Of a stretch of DNA of 64,000 bases, positions 11,121-59,047 are shown one piece after another. This DNA comes from Antechinus flavipes (lineage: Eukaryota), in the NCBI RefSeq assembly GCF_016432865.1, contig NC_067399.1:251534001-251598000 (forward strand), read 5' to 3'. A program made the position numbers and the translations under genes. Within the stretch, counting starts at the first letter, position 1. Every line of letters starts with the position of its first letter. Below the pieces are notes generated by a model. It had not been told where the DNA came from and ran no database searches. It worked only from the letters and a program-made list of their open reading frames with translations.

Positions 11121-12114
11121 CCAGTTGGAGACCAAACACAGAATAAAGGGATTCAAAGCTGGTTTCACCAGCAGGTTTGATTTGGGGCACTAAAGGTAGT
11201 TAGACTTTTAGCACACTTCATTGCAACTCCCTGGGAACAGGATGAAGAAGTAGGATCCTACTGAGCTGGTTGGAAACAATATTAGATATTCTTTTCTGAT
11301 AAGTTATCCAGAAGCTTGCCCTGGGCTTTAGGCATTGTTCTTTAGGGGGAGATAATGGAAGTTACAAGACTTAAACCACAGGGATTCAGTCTGGGTATAG
11401 ATGCAGTTTTTCTAGGTTAAATTTTGTTGCTTCCATTTGGGGTTTGAGAACTCAGTTCAAACTGCCCTAGTTTCTCCCCCCACCCTCTGCCCAGTGCCCT
11501 CCATAGGGTCTGTTCCTTATGGTAAAAAGCTATGGAATGATAATACTATCACTACTGAATAACTTTTCCTTTACTCTTCTTCCTTTACCCAGAATGATCT
11601 GGTGAGAAGCCTTTGGTAAATGATGTTCAATGGCAGAGAATAAAAGTTTTTTTTTTAATAATTGGAGAAATAAAAAGGACAATATCTTTTTCTGCTTTCA
11701 ATAAGTAGCATCAGCAGTTGTCACTGCTCATTGTCACTAAAAAAAAAGTATATTGGGGACCTTAAGCAGTTCCTTCAATGCAGTACTCAGCTTGGTAGTG
11801 ATAGACTTAGCCTAGCCTCAAAAGTTATTGCCCATTCTACAAGCAAAGATGGCCTCTGGACTTAGAGCCTCGCTGTGCCAGGGGAAACTAATTTTAGTCT
11901 CTGCAAGAGCTACCACTTGATTCCTGGGGAAAATCCACAAATTGGAGCCATTTCTCAAATGGGGGCCAACTTGTCTTGATTTTGCTGAAGAGCTTGACAA
12001 CTGAATTTGAAAAATAGACATAGCATCCTTTTTCTTCTAAAATAGTCCTCCTCTTCTTCCCTCTCACCCACCAACAAAATCATAAGGGTGTTTTTTTTTT
12101 TTCCCAAGAAGGGA

Positions 12115-24390: not shown

Positions 24391-25513
24391 TACAAAATAT
24401 ATTTCCTGCTGTGAAAGAAAACAGACAAAAATAAAGTTTGCCTCAATCTGCATTTAGATTCTTTCAGTTCTTTCTCTGGGTATAGATAGCATTTTTCATC
24501 ATAAGTCCTTCAGAATTGTCTGGGATTACTATATTGCTGAGAATAGTAAGTCATTCACAGCTTATCATCTTTCAGTATTGCTGTTATTATGAATACTGTT
24601 CTCTTGGTTTTATTTTGTATCACTTTTTTACATGTATTCCTATAGATAGCATTGATTTCTTCATACCCTTTGACCATTTATTAATTGGGAAATGACTTGT
24701 ATTCTTATCAATTAGGCTTAGTTCTCTATATGTTTGAGAAATGAAGCTTTTATTAGATAAACTTGCTGTAAAATTTTTTCCACAGTTATAATTATTTTGT
24801 ATTTCTTTCCATCTTATTTTCCCCCATCTATCCTTCTCTTTCTCTTCTTGCACCCTGCCCCTCCTAGCCAGTGTTTTGTTTCTAGCCATTACTTCTTTCT
24901 ATACACTCTCAATCCAATGTTCTCCATTCTCTTCTCCCTTTTCCCATGTATTTCTCTGTAACATAAATTTCTATACCCACTTGAGTATGTAAGTTATTCT
25001 TTCTTTGAGCCTGCCAATGAGATTAAGGTTCGAGCATTGTCTCCCACCATCATCCACTTTTCCCCTCCTTTGTAAAAGTCTTTTTATGCCTCTTTTACAT
25101 GAGACAGTTTATCCTATTCTATCTCTCCTTTCCCCTTTTCCTTAGTGCATCCCTCTTTCTCAGCCTTTAATTTTATTTTTTTAGATATGATTCCATTATA
25201 GTTGACACATACCCATGTCATCTATCTATGTATACTGCTCCTAATTGTCCTGATAATGATAAAAGTTCTTAGAAGTTACAAGTATCATCTTTCCATATAG
25301 CACAGTTTAACCTTATTGAACCATTATTATTTCTCTTTCCTATTTACCTATTTATGCTTTTCTTCAATCCTATATTTGAAAATCAGTTTTTCTATTCAGC
25401 TCTGGTCTTTTCATCAGAAATACTTGAAAGTTCTCTATTTCACTAAATGCCCATACACATACATACATACATGCATACACACACAATACTCAGTTTTGTG
25501 GGTGAGTGATTCT

Positions 25514-25674
25514 TAGTCTTCTTAAACTTTTTTCACTGTCAACCCCTTTTCACCTGAGAAATTTTACATGACCCCAGGCATATAGATATATAAATCAAAT
25601 ATTTACTAATAATAAACTATAATTTCACAATCCCCACATTCAATTATGGTCACAAACTAGAATTTAAGAGGCTG
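25514..25674. mobile_element. Short non-autonomous hAT/Charlie-like DNA transposon inside the HAL1-like element
   Basis: Degenerate TIRs (AGTCTTCTTAAAC / TTTAAGAGGCTG) interrupting ORF1 remnant; TSD not recoverable. Confidence 0.55.
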
Positions 25675-27689
25675 GCCCCTAGGATATCATATTCTAAGCC
25701 CTCTGATCATTTAATACAGAAGCTACTAAATCTTATGTTATCCTGATTGTGGCTTCACATATTTGAATTGTTTTTATTTGGAGGCGAGGTTTCTGAATGT
25801 TTAAAGTATTTTCTCATGGTGGGGAGCCATGAAATTTGATACTAATATTTCTGTTAGTTTTCATTTCAAGATCTTTTTCAGAAAGTGATTGCTAGATTCT
25901 TTCAGTTTGTATTTTACCTTCCTAGTGCACTTGTGTCCTTCCTTTTTACCCTGTGACCAAGCATGAGCAATGTAACAAAGTCCTGTACCTAGTGCCAGCA
26001 AAGGGTTTCTTGTAATCTCTTTCAGACCAGTTGTCTGATCCCCTTACTATCTGTGGGCTGAGAGCTCCAAAAGCTCACCCTGCCAATTCATATGCCCCCC
26101 AAGACCTGGTGCTGGGTTGCTGGCATATGGCCTGCACTAACCTGGATTGTGTTCCTTTCTCGCCCCAGGGAGACAGATTTTTGCTGCTGACCTTTTAAGT
26201 CTTGGGCTGGAAAATTATTTCACCCCATCCGCTTGTTGATTTTGCCATTCAGAATCTGTTTTGAGATATTATTTTAAATTTATTTGAAGAGGAATTTGGG
26301 GGACCTCAGGCAAGTCCCTGACTTTATTGTGCCATCTTGGCACTTTATTGTGCCAAGTAAACAGTTTTTTTTAATTGCATACATTTTCATATGGAGAGAG
26401 ACAGATTATAGCACTGAATTTTTCCTGCCCTCTCAGATTTCCCTATAGTCCCTCTATCTTTTCTACTGCAATTTAATGAGCAGTCACTGATAAGTCAGTC
26501 CAAGTCAAGGCACTAACATACCCAGAGTCCACTAACAGACAGGAAAGCAATGGACTCTGTCAATTTTCATTTTTATTGACAGCCTTGGAATCAAACTTCA
26601 GGGCAGCTGAGCTATTTGTGAAACATACCAGGTTTCTACAGAGAAATTTAAGGAATAAAATGAAGTTTTAAAATCCTAAAAGCCTTCCTGGAGGCTGAGG
26701 GCTAAGATACCTCTATTGTGTCACTACCTGAATTATATTTCACATTTTTCAACTCTGGGCCAAGTTTCTTGGAATATCTTGGGGCAATGTAAAGAAACTC
26801 AGTATTTTAAGGAACAACACATGCCAGTGGCCTGTACAGGTTACCCCTGTAGGCAATAATGTACCTCAATCAAATGAGCCCTGCATGCCAGGCATCTAAG
26901 CCGCCTTTGACATTTGCAAAGAATCTGTGAATTCCTCCAATGACAAAAAGCATGGAAATTAAATGCTGACTGATTAAGGTTCTGATCTTAGAAAATTAAA
27001 TTCTACTTTGAATTATTTAAATGGCTCATGGCTACTGCTGGATCTTCATTTTGCACACAGTCATGGAAGGGGGCCAATTTGTACAACAAAAAGTTTCCCT
27101 TGAATGTGGGAAATTTTAGGATTAAAGGGAATCAATCCAGTTTGGTTTCCTTCTTTGCATTCACAATGACTGCTCATACTTGGCTACCTTAATAGTATAC
27201 TTTATTTTTTTTAACCTAACTGCTTCCATGCCCCTACTACTCTGCATACACTGGTGGCATAGGGTGAAAAGTTAGGATCCTGTGACCTTGATACTAGTCA
27301 TAATCTCTGCCCTGTAGCCTCTCAAAGGCATCTTACTGACAAGTATCACCTAATAGGAGAAACGGCTTAACCTTGGATACAAACTACAATTACAATACTT
27401 TGATGCTCTGATGGAGCCATGATCTCATCAATTTCATCGTTTCCTCAAAACAGATAGGCTATAAATTATATAAATTACCCAATCTTTGTAACTCTTGTTA
27501 TTTTCTCACCCTCATCCCAGTAGGTTTGCCATAGCAGGAGTGAGGGAGGCATTTCTGCCCATTCTACTATAACATCCTACTTCCTTAATTTCTCTTAACA
27601 TCACAAAGATATCAAAGAACAGTTAGTTGATCACTGATAATCCCTTGCTTTTAGTACGTGACTAGACCATCTGTTTCTTGCATACATTT

Positions 27690-32759: not shown

Positions 32760-33390
32760 TTTCTATTTTTTTTCCTTTTTAAACTTTTTTAGGTTATACC
32801 TGTACATTCGTTTTTGAATATATTTCCATATGAGTCATGCTAAAAGAAAATAATCAGAACAAAGGGTGAAAATCATGAAAAAGAAAAAACAGAAGAAAAA
32901 AGTGATAACAATATTCTTTAATCTATATTCAATATCCATAGTTCTTTCTCTGGATACATATAGCATTTTCCATCCAAAGTTTATTGGAATTGCCTTGGAT
33001 CACTGAATTGCTGAGAAGAATTAAGCCCATCACAGTTGATCATCACATAATTTTGCTGTTTTTGTATATTGTATACAATGTTCTTCTGGTTCTGCTCCGT
33101 TCATGTTATTCTTTCTAGGCTTTTCTGAAATCAGTTTGTTCATCATTTCTTATATACTATTACTTTCATATACCACAACTTATTCAGCCATTCCCTAAAT
33201 GATTCCACTCATTTTCCAATTCTTTGCCACCACAAAGAACTGCTATAAACATTTTTGCACATGTGGGTCCTTTTCCCTCTTTTATGATCTCTATGGGATA
33301 CAGTATCAGTAGTGAGACTGCTGGATCACAGGGTATGCACAGTTTTATAGGATAGTTTGTGTATAGTTCCAAATTACTCTCCAGAATGTC
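32760..33390 (-). mobile_element. Old 5'-truncated L1 (ORF2 C-terminus and 3'UTR)
   Basis: Track ORF 33184-33372 CIPCDPAVSLLILYPIEIIKEGKGPTCAKMFIA aligns to the ORF2 C-terminus of the young L1. Confidence 0.88.
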
Positions 33391-36271: not shown

Positions 36272-36286
36272 GAATAGGCAATTATT
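36272..36286 (+). repeat. L1 target-site duplication, left copy GAATAGGCAATTATT
   Basis: Identical to 42699-42713. Confidence 0.95.
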
Positions 36287-36300
36287 TTTTTTTAAATTTT

Positions 36301-36306
36301 TTTATT
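36301..36306 (-). terminator. L1 polyadenylation signal AATAAA
   Basis: TTTATT on + directly adjacent to the T-rich tail. Confidence 0.8.
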
Positions 36307-36633
36307 TAATAATTACATTATATTTACACTCATTTCTGTTCCGATTTTTTTTTCCCCTCCCTCCCTCCACCCCCTCCCCTAGATGGCAAGCAGTCCTTTA
36401 TATGTTGGATATGTTGCAGTATATCCTAGATACAATATATGTTTGCAGAACCGAACAGTTCTCTTGTTGCACAGGGAGAATTGGATTCAGAAGGTATAAA
36501 TAATCCGGGAAGAAAAACAAAAATGCAGATAGTTCACATTCGTTTCCCAGTGTTCTTTCTTTGGGTGTAGCTGCTTTTGTCCGTCATTTATCAATTGAAA
36601 CTCAGGTCTCTTTGTCAAAGAAATCCACTTCCA

Positions 36634-39600
36634 TCAAAATATGTCCTCATACAATATCGTTGTCGAAGTGTATAATGATCTCCTGGTTCTGCTCATTTCA
36701 CTTAGCATCAGTTCATGTAGGTCTCTCCAAGCCTCTCTGTATTCATCCTGCTGGTCATTTCTTACAGAACAATAATATTCCATAACATTCATATACCACA
36801 ATTTACCCAGCCATTCTCCAATTGATGGGCATCCATTCATTTTCCAGTTTCTAGCCACTACAAACAGGGCTGCTACAAACATTTTGGCACATACAGGTCC
36901 CTTTCCCTTCTTTAGTATTTCTTTGGGATATAAGCCCAATAGAAACACTGCTGGATCAAAGGATATGCACATTTTGATAATTTTTGGGGCATAATTCCAG
37001 ATTGCTCTCCAGAATGGTTGGATTCGTTCACAACTCCACCAACAATGCATTAGTGTCCCAGTTTTCCCGCATCCCCTCCAACATTCATCATTATTTTTTC
37101 CTGTCATCTTAGCCAATCTGACAGGTGTGTAGTGGTATCTCAGAGTTGTCTTAATTTGCATTTCTCTGATCAATAATGATTTGGAACACTCTTTCATATG
37201 AGTGGTAATAGTTTCAATCTCATCCTCTGAAAATTGTCTGTTCATATCCTTTGACCATTTATCAATTGGAGAATGGCTTGATTTCTTATAAATTTGAGTC
37301 AGTTCTCTATATATTTTGGAAATGAGGCCTTTATCAGAACCTTTAACTGTGAAAATGTTTTCCCAGTTTGTTGCTTCCCTTCTAATCTTGTTTGCATTAG
37401 TTTTATTTGTACAAAGGCTTTTTAATTTGATGTAATCGAAATTTTCTATTCTGTGATCAGTAATGGTCTCTAGTTCATCTTTGGTCACAAATTTCTTTCT
37501 CCTCCACAAGTCTGAGAGATAAACTATTCTATGTTCCTCTAATTTATTTATAATCTCGTTCTTTATGCCTAGGTCATAGACCCATTTTGATCTTATCTTG
37601 GTATATGGTGTTAAGTGTGGGTCCATGCCTAATTTCTGCCATACTAATTTCCAATTATCCCAGCAGTTTTTATCAAATAATGAATTCTTTTCCCAGAAGT
37701 TAGGGGCTTTGGGTTTGTCAAACACTAGATTGCTATAGTTGACTATTCTGTCTTGTGAGCCTAGCCTTTTCCACTGATCCACTAATCTATTTCTTAGCCA
37801 ATACCAAATGGTTTTGGTGACTGCTGCTTTATAATATAATTTTAGATCAGGTACAGCTAGGCCACCTTCATTTGATTTTTTTTTTCATTAATTCCCTTGA
37901 GATTCTCGACTTTTTATTGTTCCATATGAATTTTGTTGTTATTTTTTCTAGATCAATAAAATATTTTCTTGGAAGTCTGATTGGTATAGCACTAAATAAA
38001 TAGATTAGTTTAGGGAGTATTGTCATTTTTATTATGTTCGCTCGGCCGATCCAAGAGCACTTAATATTTTTCCAATTATTTAAGTCTGACTTTATTTGTG
38101 TGGAGACTTTTTTATAATTTTGCTCATATAATTCCTGACTTTCCTTTGGTAGATAGATTCCCAAATATTTTATGGTATCAACAGTTATTCTGAATGGAAT
38201 TTCTCTTTGTATCTCTTGCTGTTGGGTTTTGTTGGTGATGTATAAAAATGCTGAGGATTTATGGGGATTTATTTTGTAGCCAGCTACTTTGCTAAAATTA
38301 TGAATTATTTCCAATAGCTTTTTGGTAGAATCTCTGGGGTTCTCTAGGTATACCATCATATCATCTGCAAAGAGTGATAGTTTGGTTTCCTCATTGCCTA
38401 CTCTAATTCCTTTTATATCTTTCTCGACTCTTATTGCCGAGGCTAGTGTTTCTAATACGATATTAAATAATAATGGTGATAGTGGGCAACCTTGCTTCAC
38501 TCCAGATCTTACTGGGAAAGGTTCCAGTTTTTCCCCATTGCATATGATGCTTACTGATGGTTTTAAATATATGCTCCTGACTATTTTAAGGAAAAGTCCA
38601 TTTATTCCTATGCTCTCAAGTGTTTTTATTAGGAATGGATGTTGGATTTTATCAAATGCTTTTTCTGCATCTATTGAGATGATCATGTGGTTTTTGTTTG
38701 TTTGGTTATTGATATAGTCAATTATGCTAATAGTTTTCCTAATATTGAACCAGCCCTGCATTCCTGGTATAAATCCTACTTGGTCATAGTGTATTATCCT
38801 GGTGACAATTTTCTGTAATCTTTTTGCTAATATTTTATTTAAGATTTTAGCATCAATATTCATTAGGGAGATTGGTCTATAATTTTCTTTCTCTGTTTTC
38901 AGCCTACCTGGTTTAGGTATCAGTACCATATCTGTGTCATAAAAGGAGTTTGGTAGGACTCCTTCAATCCCTATTTTTTCAAATAGTTTATATAACATTG
39001 GAGTTAATTGTTCTTTAAATGTTTGGTAGAATTCACATGTAAATCCATCTGGTCCTGGGGATTTTTTCTTAGGGAGTTGATTGATAGTTTGTTCTATTTC
39101 TTTTTCTGAGATGGGACTGTTTAGGATATTTACTTCTTCCTCTGTTAGTTTGGGCAAGCTGTATTTTTGGAGGTATTTTTCTATTTCATTTAAGTTGTCG
39201 AATTTATTGGCATAAAGTTGGGCAAAGTAACTCCTAATTATTGCTCTAATTTCCTCTTCGTTAGTGGTGAGTTCTCCCTTTTCATTTTTAAGACTAACAA
39301 TTTGATTTTCCTCTTTCCTTTTTTTAATCAGATTTACTAAGGGTTTGTCTATTTTGTTGGTTTTTTCATAGAACCAACTCTTAGTTTTATTAATCAATTC
39401 AATAGTTTTTTTACTTTCAATTTTATTGATCTCACCTTTTACTTTTAGAATTTCAAGTTTAGTGTTTGACTGGGGGTTTTTAATTTGTTCCTTTTCTAGC
39501 ATTTTTAATTGCAAACCCAATTCATTGACCTTCTCTTTCTCTATTTTATACAAATAGGCCTCTAGAGATATGAAATTTCCCCTTATTACCGCTTTGGCTG

Positions 39601-40465
39601 CATCCCATACATTTTGGTATGATGTCTCATTATTATCGTTTTCTTGGGTGAAGTTATTAATTATGTCTATGATTTGCTGTTTTACCCAATCATTCTTTAG
39701 TATGAGATTATTTAGTTTCCAATTATTTTTTGGTCTACTTCCCCCTGCTTTTTTGTTGAATGTAATTTTCATTGCATCGTGGTCTGAAAAGGATGCATTT
39801 ACTATTTCTGCCTTACTACATTTGAGTTTGAGGTTTTTATGTCCTAATATATGGTCAATTTTTGTATAGGTTCCATGAACTGCTGAAAAGAAAGTGTATT
39901 CCTTTCTGTCTCCATTACATTTTCTCCAGAGATCTATCATATCTAGCTTTTCTAGTATTCTGTTTACCTCTTTGACTTCTTTCTTATTTATTTTCTGGTT
40001 TGATTTATCTAATTCTGAGAGTGCAAGGTTAAGATCTCCCACTATTATAGTTTTACTGTCTATTTCTTCTTGCAGCTCTCTTAGTTTCTCTTTTAAGAAT
40101 TTAGATGCTACCCCACTTGGTGCATATATGTTTAATATAGATAGTGCTTCATTATCCATGCTACCCTTTAGCAAGATATAGTGTCCTTCCTTATCTCTTT
40201 TAATTAGGTCAATTTTTGCTTTAGCTTGATCTGAGATCAGGATGGCTACCCCTGCTTTTTTGACTTCACCTGAAGCATAGTAGATTTTGCTCCAACCTTT
40301 TACCTTTAACCTGCATGTATCTCCCCGCTTCAGGTGTGTTTCCTGTAAACAACATATTGTAGGATTCTGGCTTTTAATCCATTCTGCTAACCGCTTCCTC
40401 TTTATGGGGGAGTTTACCCCGTTCACGTTTATGGTTAGAATGACCAATTCTGTATTACTTGCCAT
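36634..40465 (-). pseudogene. ORF2: L1 ORF2p (APE endonuclease, RT, CCHC), single +1 frameshift at 37876-37885; 1276 aa if one base is removed
   Basis: Track ORFs 37868-40465 and 36634-37782 join without stops when A10 becomes A9 ([39 protein letters not shown]). QETH, GDLN, IDH, SDH, DAEKAFD, QGCPLSP, FADD and CWRGC..HCWWSC are intact. Confidence 0.97.
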
Positions 40466-40986
40466 CTTGTTAACCCCGGTTTATGCTTTCCTCCCTTCTT
40501 TCCCCTTTCCCCCCCTTCCAAGTATTAAGCTTGTGAGCACCCCTTGCTTCTCACAGCCCTCCCTTTTTAGTGTCCCTCCCCCCGCCTTAGAGTTCCTCCC
40601 CCTATCTTACCCCTTTCCCTCCCAGTTCCCGTATTCCCTTCCGCTTAGCTTATTCCTTCCCTTTCCACTTTTCCCTTCTCACTTTTCAATGAGATGGGAG
40701 AAGTTTCACCATAGATTGAATATGTCTTAAGATTTTTCACTTAAAGCCAATTCTGAAGGCAGTAAGATACCCACTATATTCATCCCCCTCCATTCTTTCT
40801 CTCAGATATAATAGGTTTCCTATGCCTCTTCATGAGATGTACTACCCCCACTTTACCCTTTTTCTGGTACAATGTCCTTTCCACATCAATTTCTAGAACA
40901 AGGTATACATGTATTCTTTATACATCTATATAGTCAAAATATAGTTCCCAAGATTAATCTTTACCTTTTTAGATTTCTCTTGAGTT

Positions 40987-42090
40987 CTATATTTGTAGAT
41001 CAAACTTTTTGTTAAGTTCTGGTTTTTTCATCAGAAATAGATGAAATTCGCTTACTTCGTTGAATGTCCATCTTCTTCCCTGGAAAAAGATGCTCATTCT
41101 CGCTGGGTAAGTTATTTTTGGTTGCATACCAAGTTCCTTAGCCTTTCGGAATATCATATTCCAGGCCCTTCGATCTTTTAATGTGGATGCTGCCAGATCC
41201 TGGGTGATCCTTATTGTGGCTCCTTGATACTTGAATTGGGTTTTTCTAGCCGCTTGCAATATTTTTTCTTTCACCTGAGGGTTCTGGCATTTGGCCACTA
41301 TATTCCTTGGTGTTTTGATTTTAGGATCCCTTTCAGTGGGTGATCGATGAATCCTTTCAATGTTTATTTTTTCCTCTGTTCCTATGACTTCTGGGCAGTT
41401 CTCTTTGATAATTTCCTGGAAGACAGTGTCCAGGCTCTTTTTTTCATCATGTTTTTCTGGGAGTCCAATGATTCTCAGATTGTCTCTCCTGGATCTGTTT
41501 TCCAGGTCTGTTGTCTTCCCCAGAAGGTATTTCACATTTTTCTCCATTGTTTGATTTTTTTGGATTTGCTTGACTGATTCTTCTTGTCTCCTCGAGTCAT
41601 TCAATTCCACTTGTTCAATTCTGATTTTCAGTGAAGTATTCTCTTCACTCACTTTTTTAAAATCTTTCTCTAATTGTCCAATTGAGTTCTTTTGTTCTGT
41701 GGAATTTTTTTCCATTTCGCCAATTTTGTTTTTTAGAGAGCTGTTTTCTGTTTCCAGTTCACTAATCCTATTTTTCAAGGATTTTACTTCTTTATCCACT
41801 CTCTCTTTAACTTTCTCCAGGCTCTTTTGCCAAGCCTCCCTCTCCTTTTCCCAAGCTTCCCTCTCCTTTTGCCAAGCCTCACTCTGCTTTCCCCATTTTT
41901 CTTCTAGCTCCCTTGTGAGAGCCTTTTTAATCACTTCTATGAGGTTCATCTGTGCTGAGGAACAGACGATCTCCTCCTTTGGGGAATCACCTGGGGACTG
42001 CCTGTTTTTAGTCTCCTCAGGATTTAGAGTCTGCTCTCTATCTGTATAGAAGCTGTCAAGGGTTAAAGTCCTCTTCAGCTTCTTGCTCAT
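40987..42090 (-). CDS. ORF1: L1 ORF1p, 367 aa (coiled coil, RRM, CTD), uninterrupted
   Basis: ATG to TAG open frame; DLENRSRRDNLRIIGLPE, ERIHR, DRRAW and ITYPARMS motifs typical of L1 ORF1p. Confidence 0.98.
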   Translation of the reverse strand: MSKKLKRTLTLDSFYTDREQTLNPEETKNRQSPGDSPKEEIVCSSAQMNLIEVIKKALTRELEEKWGKQSEAWQKEREAWEKEREAWQKSLEKVKERVDKEVKSLKNRISELETENSSLKNKIGEMEKNSTEQKNSIGQLEKDFKKVSEENTSLKIRIEQVELNDSRRQEESVKQIQKNQTMEKNVKYLLGKTTDLENRSRRDNLRIIGLPEKHDEKKSLDTVFQEIIKENCPEVIGTEEKINIERIHRSPTERDPKIKTPRNIVAKCQNPQVKEKILQAARKTQFKYQGATIRITQDLAASTLKDRRAWNMIFRKAKELGMQPKITYPARMSIFFQGRRWTFNEVSEFHLFLMKKPELNKKFDLQI

Positions 42091-42698
42091 TCTGTCTATT
42101 AATCAGAGACAAACTACCAAAGAAAAACAGAAAAAACTGGAGTCTTTCTTTGGGGGGGGGGGGGGGGGCCTGGGTGTGTTATCGAGCTTCCTCTACAGAC
42201 TGCAGGGGGCAGCAGTGAGGCACTAGCAGGACTGTGCTGCGCCTGCGCTCTGAGATCCCAAAGCGTGCTGAGTCACTGAGGGGAGGGAAGGGGGGGGGGG
42301 GGGGCAGGTCCTGAGAGACTCCAGCTGTTTGCGGTTGTATTCTTCAGCCCCGGTGTTTTTAGCTTCTCTGCTGGGCTGTTGACTTGCTGCAGGTTCCAAA
42401 CCTGTAGCGAAGCTCTCCCCGCAGAGACGGCTACGATCACTCCCCACCCCCTCTCAGCTCTGCTCCCGTGCTCTCACTGCCGCTGCCCTCAGCCTGCGCC
42501 CGATCTAAAACCGCCCCAGCCCTCCAGTAAAGACAGACCTTTCTTGGCGGATCTCAAGGATGGCTTCTCTTGGTAACTATTTGTGAGTTTTTTTTCAGTC
42601 AAGCATTGATTCAGAGGCTTGTAATGAAGTGGATAGTGAGAGAAAGCGCGGAGCTTATGCAACTGTGAGCCTCCTCTCTGCCATCTTAACCGGAAGTC
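42091..42698 (-). promoter_or_regulatory. L1 5'UTR internal promoter
   Basis: About 20 CpG in about 520 bp (manual count); ETS-type ACTTCCGG and YY1-like AAGATGGCAG at the extreme 5' end. Confidence 0.85.
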
Positions 42699-42713
42699 GA
42701 ATAGGCAATTATT
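42699..42713 (+). repeat. L1 target-site duplication, right copy GAATAGGCAATTATT
   Basis: Identical to 36272-36286; followed by AAAG, giving an endonuclease-type site. Confidence 0.95.
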
Positions 42714-47769: not shown

Positions 47770-48995
47770 ATTTAGTCTAAAGCAAGAGTTAGAGACAATA
47801 ATAAAAAATAAAATATATAATTCTGATTACATAAATTTGAAAGGCTTCTGCATAAACAAAATATACCTAGGAAATAGGAAAAAATCTTTATATCAAATTT
47901 TTCAGATATATAAGATATCCATATGTATATGTATAATATGTTTATGTCTTTAAAAGTTGCTATAAATATTTTTCATATTACTTGAAGAGAATATATATAA
48001 TGTATACACAAATATACATACATATATGTATACATACATACACACATATGGGCATATATATATATATATATAGGTTTATACATATGTGTATATATGACCA
48101 AAAGTCATTCCCCAATATCTAAGCAGTAAAAGCATATGAAAAATTCTTAAAAGAATTGTAAACTATTAACAAGCATATGAAGGAATGTTCTGAATCACTA
48201 ATAATTTGAAATGCAAGTCAAAACAACCAACAAATTGGCAAAAATGACAAAAGGTAGGAATACTCGGTGTTGAAGAGATTGTAGGAAAATAAAAACTTTG
48301 CTGGTGGGAGGCATGAATAAGTACAACCATTTTGGAAAGCAACTTGAAATTATGTTAATAAAGTAAGTAATATGGTCCTATATTCTTTGATCCAGAAATT
48401 CCATTATTAGGCTTATGCCCCACAGAAGTCATTGATAAGAAAAAAGTCCCTATATATATCAAAACATTTCAACCAGCATTTTTGTGGTAGCAAGAAACTG
48501 GAAATAAAGCAGGTGCCCATTGAAAGATGGATGACTAAACAAGTTGCGGTCCATGAAAGTAATGGAATAGTATTGTCCTGTAAGAAATGACAAATATTAT
48601 AAATACAAAGAAGCATGGGAACACATGAAATGACAAAGATAAGCCGAATCAAGATAATAAGTTATACAATGTTTATAATAATGTAAATTAAAAGAACAGC
48701 AACCACAAAATAATCAAAAACAAATGCTGAAAAATTACAAAAAACAAAAAGATAGATGAAGATATGTGAGAGGATACCTTTCTATTATTCTTATCTGCAA
48801 TGGTAGTTCACAATCACAACATATTGCATATATTTTCAGACTTTTTCAATGTATTTATCAGTTTTTCTGATTTTTTTCCTCTTTTAAAAAAAATTATTAT
48901 ATTGGATGGTTCTATGGGAAGTAGAAGGATTCTGGGAGAAATTTAGGTGATGCGAAAACAAAGGATAGCAATAAAATTTTATTTTAAGAAAGAAA
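47770..48995 (+). mobile_element. Old L1 (ORF2 C-terminus and 3'UTR) with internal (TA/CA) microsatellite
   Basis: GATTACATAAATTTGAAAGGCTTCTGCATAAAC, CAACCATTTTGGAAAGC, TTTGATCCAGAAATTCCATTATTAGG. Confidence 0.85.
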
Positions 48996-56789: not shown

Positions 56790-56950
56790 AGAAATAATAT
56801 CTGTGGCCATCATTTGGGGAATAGTTGAACAAATTGTGGTATATGAATATAAATATTATTGCACCTTAAGAAAAAAAATCAAATATGAGCAATTTCAAGA
56901 AAAATTAGGAGACTTGTTTGAATTGATTCAAAGTACTGTAAGCAAAACCA
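56790..56950 (+). mobile_element. Old L1 ORF2 C-terminal fragment
   Basis: TTTGGGGAATAGTTGAACAAATTGTGGTATATGAAT (GEWLNKLWYMN-like). Confidence 0.7.
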
Positions 56951-57006: not shown

Positions 57007-57138
57007 NNNNNNNNNNNNNNNNNNNNNNNNNNNNNNNNNNNNNNNNNNNNNNNNNNNNNNNNNNNNNNNNNNNNNNNNNNNNNNNNNNNNNNNNNNNNNN
57101 NNNNNNNNNNNNNNNNNNNNNNNNNNNNNNNNNNNNNN
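57007..57138. other. Assembly gap, 132 N
   Basis: Run of N. Confidence 1.

Positions 57139-58885: not shown

Positions 58886-59047
<162 letters not shown>

What the first reader, a model, noticed from the sequence alone, without database searches (positions are those of the whole stretch)
36272..42713. Full-length L1 one base from intact, inside CDH4
Seen: both termini, perfect TSD, CpG-rich promoter, intact 367-aa ORF1, and all EN (QETH, GDLN, IDH, SDH), RT (DAEKAFD, FADD) and CCHC motifs; only one frameshift in 3.8 kb of ORF2 and no nonsense codons. Inference: very recent insertion, possibly polymorphic, and potentially a source element if the frameshift is an assembly error. From recall: L1 was once thought inactive in the Tasmanian devil and later reported somatically active in devil facial tumour; relevant only if this is a dasyurid genome.
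Basis: partly seen in the sequence, partly recalled or inferred. Interest (0 to 1): 0.72.

Follow-up and report, generated by a model that had tools for sequence, protein, structure and literature searches.

The report
Young near-intact dasyurid L1 retrotransposon
This is a real, complete and evolutionarily young copy of the L1 jumping gene in a carnivorous-marsupial genome. Its only visible defect is one reading-frame change inside a run of ten A's, a spot that breaks in many related copies and is also prone to assembly error. It is an ordinary member of a known family, and I could not decide whether it is alive.

Summary
A 6,412-nt L1 lies on the minus strand at 36287-42698, between perfect 15-nt target-site duplications. 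ORF1 is intact (367 aa). ORF2 has no stop codon and one frame change, confined to 37871-37885, which is an A10 run plus five bases.

New here:
- The 5' end matches exactly that of two full-length dunnart L1s.
- The architecture, including the 521-nt spacer, fits the dasyurid family L1-1_SH.
- The A run is an indel hotspot. Copies in dunnart, devil and opossum break at the same place.
- The sequence after the break shows the same purifying selection as the sequence before it, so the break is recent.
- The break maps to the thumb-wrist junction, so the ORF2 product as assembled lacks the wrist and the C-terminal domain.
- ORF integrity implies less than about 0.4% decay since insertion.

L1 competence in devils is already published, and this scan noted a fully intact L1 elsewhere in this genome. 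Verdict: a new member of a known kind, of moderate to low interest.

The parts
42699..42713 (-). 5' target-site duplication, 15 nt
   Evidence: Identical to 36272-36286. The L1 body starts at the next base, 42698.
42091..42698 (-). 5'UTR, 608 nt, with a conserved 5' terminus and a GC-rich core
   Evidence: The first 23 nt are shared with the starts of two dunnart full-length copies. They hold ETS-like and YY1-like motifs, identified by recall only. GC is 55% and CpG observed/expected is 0.41. C15 and C17 runs lie at 42290-42304 and 42152-42168.
40987..42090 (-). ORF1, intact, 367 aa: coiled coil, RRM and C-terminal domain
   Evidence: PF02994 at 1.9e-12, PF17490 at 7.4e-07. One search aligns it to human ORF1p structures 2ykp and 2yko.
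40466..40986 (-). ORF1-ORF2 spacer, 521 nt, purine-rich towards ORF2
   Evidence: It aligns to the dunnart copies at 73-74%. The L1-1_SH consensus has a 509-nt spacer (PMC4408412).
37868..40465 (-). ORF2 first piece, 865 aa: endonuclease, tower and RT through the thumb, ending at a TGA in the wrong frame
   Evidence: RVT_1 at 1.5e-47, Exo_endo_phos at 4.3e-21. One search aligns it to human ORF2p residues 3-865.
37871..37885 (-). Interval that must contain the single frame change: the A10 run 37876-37885 plus five bases
   Evidence: Both frames are open only here. It is the only homopolymer of 8 or more in the 4.9 kb of coding sequence. Its length varies among the dunnart copies.
36634..37884 (-). 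ORF2 second piece, 416 codons plus the stop: wrist and C-terminal domain, with the CCHC motif at 37030-37083
   Evidence: One search aligns it to human ORF2p residues 863-1265. dN/dS against the dunnart copies is 0.14-0.15.
36287..36633 (-). 3'UTR with AATAAA at 36301-36306 and a short A tail at 36287-36293
   Evidence: Read directly. The tail is only 7-9 A long.
36272..36286 (-). 3' target-site duplication, 15 nt
   Evidence: The reconstructed target reads TTT/AATAAT on the L1 sense strand, close to the L1 endonuclease preference TT/AAAA (preference by recall).

Best explanation
This is a young, full-length L1 of the dasyurid L1-1_SH-like lineage. It inserted by target-primed reverse transcription, antisense, into an intron of a classical cadherin gene.

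Shown:
- Complete anatomy: authentic 5' terminus, 5'UTR, intact ORF1, the 521-nt spacer typical of the family, an ORF2 with every catalytic motif, AATAAA, an A tail and a 15-nt TSD.
- One frame change inside an A10 run at the thumb-wrist junction of ORF2.

Inferred:
- The insertion dates from roughly the last few million years.
- As assembled, ORF2 yields an endonuclease-RT protein that lacks the wrist and the C-terminal domain. This copy therefore could not mobilise itself.
- The A run is a built-in fragile site of marsupial L1 ORF2. Copies in three other genera break there independently.

Whether the break is in the animal or only in the assembly is undecided. I lean 55:45 to a consensus error of a PacBio-CLR assembly. 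If that is right, the true allele would be a candidate source element.
For: - Anatomy.
- Domains: Pfam. Human ORF2p structures are collinear with both pieces, and ORF1p with its structures.
- Authentic 5' end and family architecture: two dunnart full-length copies align from window base 42698 onwards. L1-1_SH features come from PMC4408412.
- Lineage under selection: dN/dS against the dunnart copies is 0.13-0.24 for ORF1 and for both ORF2 pieces. The piece after the break gives 0.14-0.15.
- No private change at invariant columns in the first ORF2 piece.
- Youth: a stop-free and otherwise indel-free 4,926 coding nt gives a joint probability below 5% once neutral divergence exceeds about 0.4%. 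CpG is retained 5-13 times better than in the flanks. The other L1 debris in the window is 21-31% diverged.
- Hotspot: ten dunnart copies fall into four length classes at the run. Eight of nine long alignments have a gap event there, against 0.069 expected per 16 nt elsewhere. Devil protein P0121 is 829/862 identical and leaves the frame at the same run, into the other wrong frame. Opossum P0123 and P0124 also end there.
- Consequence: wrist (863-1061) and C-terminal domain are required for retrotransposition (PMC10830420).
- Lean to assembly error: if this is the Antechinus flavipes reference, as scan notes say, it was built from PacBio subreads with wtdbg2 and polished by pilon with 100-bp reads (PMC9290055). 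Such polishing works poorly inside young repeats (my inference).
Against:
- No sibling copy from the same genome could be compared, so the age rests on ORF integrity and on assumed mutation rates.
- The A tail is only 7-9 nt, which is short for a very recent insertion by human standards.
- Two residues after the break differ from all 23 placental, opossum and dunnart sequences at otherwise invariant columns: codons 37414-37416 (L where the others have F) and 36961-36963 (S where the others have P). These may be private damage or a trait of the subfamily.
- The 5'-terminal YY1-like motif has lost two CpGs relative to the dunnart copies.
- The species, and therefore the assembly method, comes from other agents' notes. 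I tested it only by consistency.
Confidence: 0.85

Rival explanations
1. The frame change is real. The copy either arrived already broken, through slippage of the reverse transcriptase in the A run, or slipped in the germline soon after insertion. It is a dead, non-autonomous relic that only looks one step from intact.
For: The run is a true mutational hotspot in independent copies from assemblies of other species. Two unusual residues lie after the break. The A tail is short.
Against: At 0.4% decay or less, the rate of length change estimated from the dunnart copies predicts only a few per cent chance of a real change. That figure is my rough inference. A long-read assembly without accurate polishing errs at such runs at least as often. 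The part after the break has no stop in 416 codons and dN/dS of 0.14-0.15.
Confidence: 0.42
2. The element is older and fixed, and has kept open frames by chance or by gene conversion from younger copies.
For: Thousands of full-length copies are expected in a dasyurid genome (1,948 in the devil), so a lucky survivor could be picked out. The A tail is short.
Against: The joint probability of no stop and no other indel falls below 0.4% at 0.75% divergence. The TSD is perfect at 15/15. CpG is retained far above the level in the flanks.
Confidence: 0.06
3. The frame change is tolerated. Polymerase or ribosome slippage on the A run restores the frame in a fraction of molecules, so frameshifted copies of this family can still make some full-length ORF2p.
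For: The three best-preserved dasyurid ORF2s I could examine (this one, devil P0121, dunnart L002) are all out of frame at this run. A fold starting right after the run has z = -2.4.
Against: There is no conserved structure and no covariation across six copies: consensus energy is -9.5 kcal/mol, the covariation term is 0.03, and there are no compensatory pairs. The copies leave the frame in different directions. Half of the dunnart copies belong to a length class different from both out-of-frame classes. The opossum majority protein P0122 (252 members) reads straight through without a long run. A plain hotspot explains all of this.
Confidence: 0.03

Closest known systems
L1-1_SH, the youngest L1 family of the Tasmanian devil (Repbase; described in PMC4408412)
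   Same: Overall size: 6,412 nt here, against copies of 6,432-6,762 nt. A long ORF1-ORF2 spacer: 521 nt against 509 nt. TSDs of 5-15 nt. A devil ORF2 fragment (P0121) is 96% identical over 862 residues with no gap.
   Different: The host genus differs, by scan notes. The best ORF1 match in the devil is only 83%. The published consensus annotation gives a 1,158-nt 5'UTR and a 756-nt ORF1, against 608 nt and 1,104 nt here.
Retrotransposition-competent devil L1 source elements, for example chr1:516.59 Mb in mSarHar1.11 (bioRxiv 10.1101/2022.05.27.493404)
   Same: Full-length dasyurid L1 of about 6.4-6.6 kb. It is the same kind of element whose activity was shown by somatic insertions and 3' transductions in DFT2.
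   Different: Those elements have demonstrated offspring. This one has an ORF2 frame break as assembled, and it has no tested offspring, expression or polymorphism.
Human L1 (L1HS / L1RP ORF2p, PDB 8sxt, 8uw3, 8c8j; ORF1p 2ykp)
   Same: Domain order and all catalytic motifs. The alignment is collinear over residues 3-1265, apart from a few one-residue gaps. ORF1p has the RRM and C-terminal domain.
   Different: The spacer is 521 nt here against about 63 nt in human (by recall). The 5'UTR is unrelated apart from a YY1-like motif near the start (by recall). Human ORF2 has no long A run at the thumb-wrist junction (by recall of the human DNA; no human DNA was examined here).
Opossum L1-1_MD
   Same: 74% identity in the first ORF2 piece. 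Some opossum copies also break in the lysine-run region (P0123 and P0124).
   Different: The opossum family is known to have hundreds of intact copies (PMC4408412). Its majority sequence, P0122, lacks the long homopolymer at this site.

Membership tests
LINE-1 (L1 clade non-LTR retrotransposon) | ORF1 with the L1 RRM (Transposase_22) and C-terminal domain | tested here: met
   PF02994 at 1.9e-12 and PF17490 at 7.4e-07. Aligned to human and mouse ORF1p structures.
LINE-1 (L1 clade non-LTR retrotransposon) | ORF2 with an APE-type endonuclease, a reverse transcriptase and a C-terminal CCHC motif, in that order | tested here: met
   PF03372 and PF00078. Collinear with human ORF2p. CCHC motif at 37030-37083.
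LINE-1 (L1 clade non-LTR retrotransposon) | Marks of target-primed reverse transcription: an A tail after a poly(A) signal, a short TSD and an A/T-rich nick site | tested here: met
   15/15 TSD. AATAAA and a 7-9 nt A tail, with target TTT/AATAAT.
Dasyurid L1-1_SH-like lineage | Spacer of about 0.5 kb between ORF1 and ORF2, and a shared 5' terminus | tested here: met
   The 521-nt spacer aligns to dunnart copies, against 509 nt in L1-1_SH. The 5' terminus is shared with two dunnart copies.
Dasyurid L1-1_SH-like lineage | Nucleotide identity to the L1-1_SH consensus within subfamily range | not testable with these tools
   No Repbase sequence or devil genomic DNA was on hand. Look-ups of devil proteins P0001 and P0121 found no locus.
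Retrotransposition-competent source L1 | Both ORFs intact | tested here: not met
   ORF1 is intact. ORF2 as assembled changes frame within 37871-37885. Whether this holds in the animal is unknown.
Retrotransposition-competent source L1 | Evidence of offspring (3' transductions), of insertion polymorphism or of expression | not testable with these tools
No collection of dasyurid genomes can be searched by DNA.

The most novel reading that the evidence does not exclude
The A run at the thumb-wrist junction is more than a fragile site. Copies that are out of frame there still yield a little full-length ORF2p, through polymerase or ribosome slippage on the run. Such copies would stay mobile, and sequence-only censuses of 'intact' dasyurid L1s would undercount the active ones.
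Probability: 0.03. Interest if true: 0.75.

Novelty: new member of a known kind. Interest (0 to 1): 0.33.

Why it matters
Dasyurid marsupials were proposed to have lost L1 activity (PMC4408412, PMC5010896). That view was overturned for the devil by somatic L1 insertions in DFT2 (10.1101/2022.05.27.493404).

A young, structurally complete L1 in another dasyurid genus adds to the evidence that the lineage stayed active well after the genera split. I found no paper on L1 activity in Antechinus in the library.

The practical lesson is about method. The only lesion lies in a homopolymer that is both a true mutational hotspot and a typical long-read consensus error. Counts of 'intact ORF2' in such assemblies can therefore be wrong in either direction.

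On its own this copy is one of probably many, and the scan has already noted a fully intact one in the same genome.

Tried and rejected
The frameshift, the filled or empty site, and expression were not examined.
- Sibling copies: the window holds none. The best other L1 fragment is 79% identical.
- ORF1p has no relative above 83% identity in the protein collection, so an exact-sequence look-up of it was pointless. Look-ups of devil proteins P0001 and P0121 found no locus.
- Programmed frameshift: a single-sequence fold looked mildly stable, but the six-copy alignment shows no conserved helix and no covariation. Rejected as unsupported.
- Relaxed selection after the break: rejected. dN/dS is 0.14-0.15 after the break, against 0.13-0.24 before it.
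- CDH4 label: only cadherin-2 is available among solved structures for that exon. My motif scan found no 'LDRE' motif in any of the six frames of the window. I ran no further search on the host gene's name.
- Orthologous empty site in other marsupials: not obtainable. Genes longer than 100 kb come without DNA, and no DNA search of marsupial genomes is offered.
The run length that would keep the frame is deliberately not stated.
Full report
**What is there.** The element lies on the minus strand. The repeat finder returns a perfect 15-nt direct repeat at 36272-36286 and 42699-42713, so the L1 proper spans 36287-42698 (6,412 nt). Read 5' to 3' it has these parts:
- A 608-nt 5'UTR, 42698-42091.
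- ORF1, 42090-40987, 367 aa.
- A 521-nt purine-rich spacer.
- ORF2, from the ATG at 40465 to the stop at 36636-36634.
- A 3'UTR with AATAAA at 36306-36301, then a short A tail at 36293-36287 that abuts the 3' TSD.

The reconstructed target reads TTT/AATAAT on the element's sense strand. From established knowledge of the L1 endonuclease preference, TT/AAAA, this is a typical nick site.

**Proteins.**
- ORF1p matches the L1 RRM and the dsRBD-like C-terminal domain and aligns to the human ORF1p structures.
- The first ORF2 piece (865 aa) matches Exo_endo_phos and RVT_1 and aligns to human ORF2p residues 3-865.
- The second piece (416 aa) aligns to residues 863-1265. The two alignments contain only a few one-residue gaps. 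Nothing is missing, and there is exactly one change of frame.
- The two frames are both open only across 37871-37885, which is an A10 run (37876-37885) plus five bases.
- That run is the only homopolymer of 8 or more in 4,926 nt of coding sequence.
- In human ORF2p the wrist domain starts at residue 863. Wrist and C-terminal domain are both needed for retrotransposition (PMC10830420). The product as assembled would therefore stop at the end of the thumb and should not support autonomous mobility (inference).

**Whose genome and which family.** The best database match of the first ORF2 piece is a Sarcophilus harrisii protein, 829/862 identical with no gaps. ORF1p is 83% identical to a devil protein and 60-70% identical to Sminthopsis proteins.

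Five Sminthopsis crassicaudata loci fetched through annotated ORF1-like proteins carry L1 copies. Two full-length copies are 83% identical to the element, and their alignments begin exactly at window base 42698. This establishes the true 5' terminus.

By region, identity to these two copies is as follows:

| Region | Identity |
|---|---|
| 5'UTR | 68% |
| ORF1 | 77-80% |
| Spacer | 73-74% |
| ORF2 | 89-90% |
| 3'UTR | 72-74% |

The long spacer, the overall size and the TSD length agree with the published description of L1-1_SH: a 509-nt spacer, copies of 6,432-6,762 nt, and TSDs of 5-15 nt (PMC4408412).

Other follow-up notes of this scan identify the genome as the yellow-footed antechinus reference. 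My data are consistent with that. The host is a dasyurid, nearer to the devil than to the dunnart and identical to neither. I did not verify the species independently.

**Selection and age.** Against the dunnart copies, dN/dS is as follows:

| Segment | dN/dS |
|---|---|
| ORF1 | 0.19-0.21 |
| ORF2 before the break | 0.13-0.24 |
| ORF2 after the break | 0.14-0.15 |

The segment after the break evolved under the same constraint as the rest, so the break is recent and not an old trait of the lineage.

Under a simple neutral model, 5.25% of random substitutions in these ORFs would create a stop. With an assumed indel-to-substitution ratio of 0.1, the joint probability of seeing no stop and no other indel is 0.105 at 0.3% divergence and 0.023 at 0.5%. 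Using stops alone, the 5% level lies between 1.0% and 1.5%. At commonly assumed mammalian neutral rates this means at most a few million years.

CpG observed/expected is 0.41 in the 5'UTR, against 0.03-0.08 in the flanks. The other L1 debris in the window is 21-31% diverged.

Some points argue against extreme youth:
- The A tail is only 7-9 nt.
- Two codons after the break carry residues found in none of 23 placental sequences, the opossum or the dunnart copies: 37414-37416 and 36961-36963.
- The first ORF2 piece, by contrast, has no such private change at invariant columns.

**The break sits in a hotspot.**
- Ten dunnart copies that span the site fall into four length classes.
- Eight of nine long ORF2 alignments have a gap event at the run, against 0.069 expected for a 16-nt window elsewhere in ORF2.
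- One of the two full-length dunnart copies changes frame at the same place.
- Devil protein P0121 ends with the six residues that the window encodes in its third frame just after the run. It therefore left the frame at the same run, but in the other direction.
- Two opossum proteins also end there, while the large opossum cluster P0122 reads through.

The lysine run at the thumb-wrist junction is thus a fragile point of marsupial L1 ORF2, and the breaks are independent events.

If the genome is the published Antechinus flavipes assembly, it was made from about 100x PacBio subreads. The reads were corrected with canu and assembled with wtdbg2. The assembly was polished with pilon, using 100-bp BGISEQ reads (PMC9290055). 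Length errors at homopolymers are the typical residual error of such assemblies, and short reads polish poorly inside young repeats (established knowledge plus inference). Two unverified first-reader notes in this scan also suspect homopolymer frame errors elsewhere in the assembly.

On the other side, the hotspot makes a real change plausible too. My rough weighing is 55% consensus error, 42% real change and 3% tolerated slippage.

**Slippage idea.** Several well-preserved copies are out of frame at the run, so I asked whether a frameshift signal could be conserved there. A fold of the 111 nt from the run onward has z = -2.4. An alignment of six copies gives a weak consensus of -9.5 kcal/mol, a covariation term of 0.03 and no compensatory pair. 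The copies also leave the frame in different directions. I found no support for the idea.

**Context in the literature.**
- Gallus et al. found no functional L1 in the devil and proposed reduced L1 activity across Dasyuromorphia, while warning about assembly artefacts (PMC4408412, PMC5010896).
- Ivancevic et al. listed the devil among candidates for L1 extinction (PMC5203782).
- Stammnitz et al. then annotated 1,948 full-length L1s in mSarHar1.11, found hundreds of somatic insertions in DFT2 and identified 35 source elements (10.1101/2022.05.27.493404).
- I found no paper on L1 activity in Antechinus.
- This scan has noted a full-length L1 with both ORFs intact elsewhere in the same genome (s1-208961; unverified).

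**Host gene.** A classical-cadherin EC2 exon lies at 58889-59017 on the + strand, so the L1 is antisense to it and 16 kb upstream. The best solved-structure match is cadherin-2. The N run at 57007-57138 was left untouched.

The broken ORF2 was always handled as two separate pieces. I do not state which run length would keep the frame.

**Verdict.** This is a new member of a known kind, and interest is moderate to low unless reads show an intact, polymorphic allele.

Noticed in passing
window 41824-41895: ORF1 contains three tandem 21-nt (7-aa, heptad-length) repeats at 90% identity in its coiled-coil region (EAWQKER-like units). Dunnart ORF1s differ in length (373 and 417 codons open). This suggests length variation of the coiled coil, as is known for mouse L1.
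   Followed up: partly
window 42152-42168 and 42290-42304: Runs of 17 and 15 C (sense strand) lie in the 5'UTR. Their assembled lengths are as doubtful as that of the A10 run if the assembly comes from noisy long reads.
   Followed up: no
   Followed up: partly
L002:7355-7400 (Sminthopsis crassicaudata): This full-length dunnart L1 starts with a tandem duplication of its first ~22 nt (the GGGACTTCCGGCCAAGATGGCG unit, twice). That doubles the ETS-like and YY1-like promoter motifs.
   Followed up: no
protein P0017: An L1 ORF1 protein 53% identical to this one is deposited as a hypothetical protein of a 'Bacteroidales bacterium' MAG on a 2.5-kb contig. This is almost certainly host (marsupial) DNA contaminating a metagenome bin.
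   Followed up: no
window 24660-25775, 33152-33388, 48298-48633, 56804-56873: Old L1 fragments, 69-79% identical to the young element. They give the background age of L1 debris in this intron.
   Followed up: partly
window 11300-11900: Another note (s1-184926) places a CDH4 micro-exon next to an 'LDRE' motif here. My six-frame motif scan of the whole window found no LDRE, and the ORFs listed there look non-coding.
   Followed up: no
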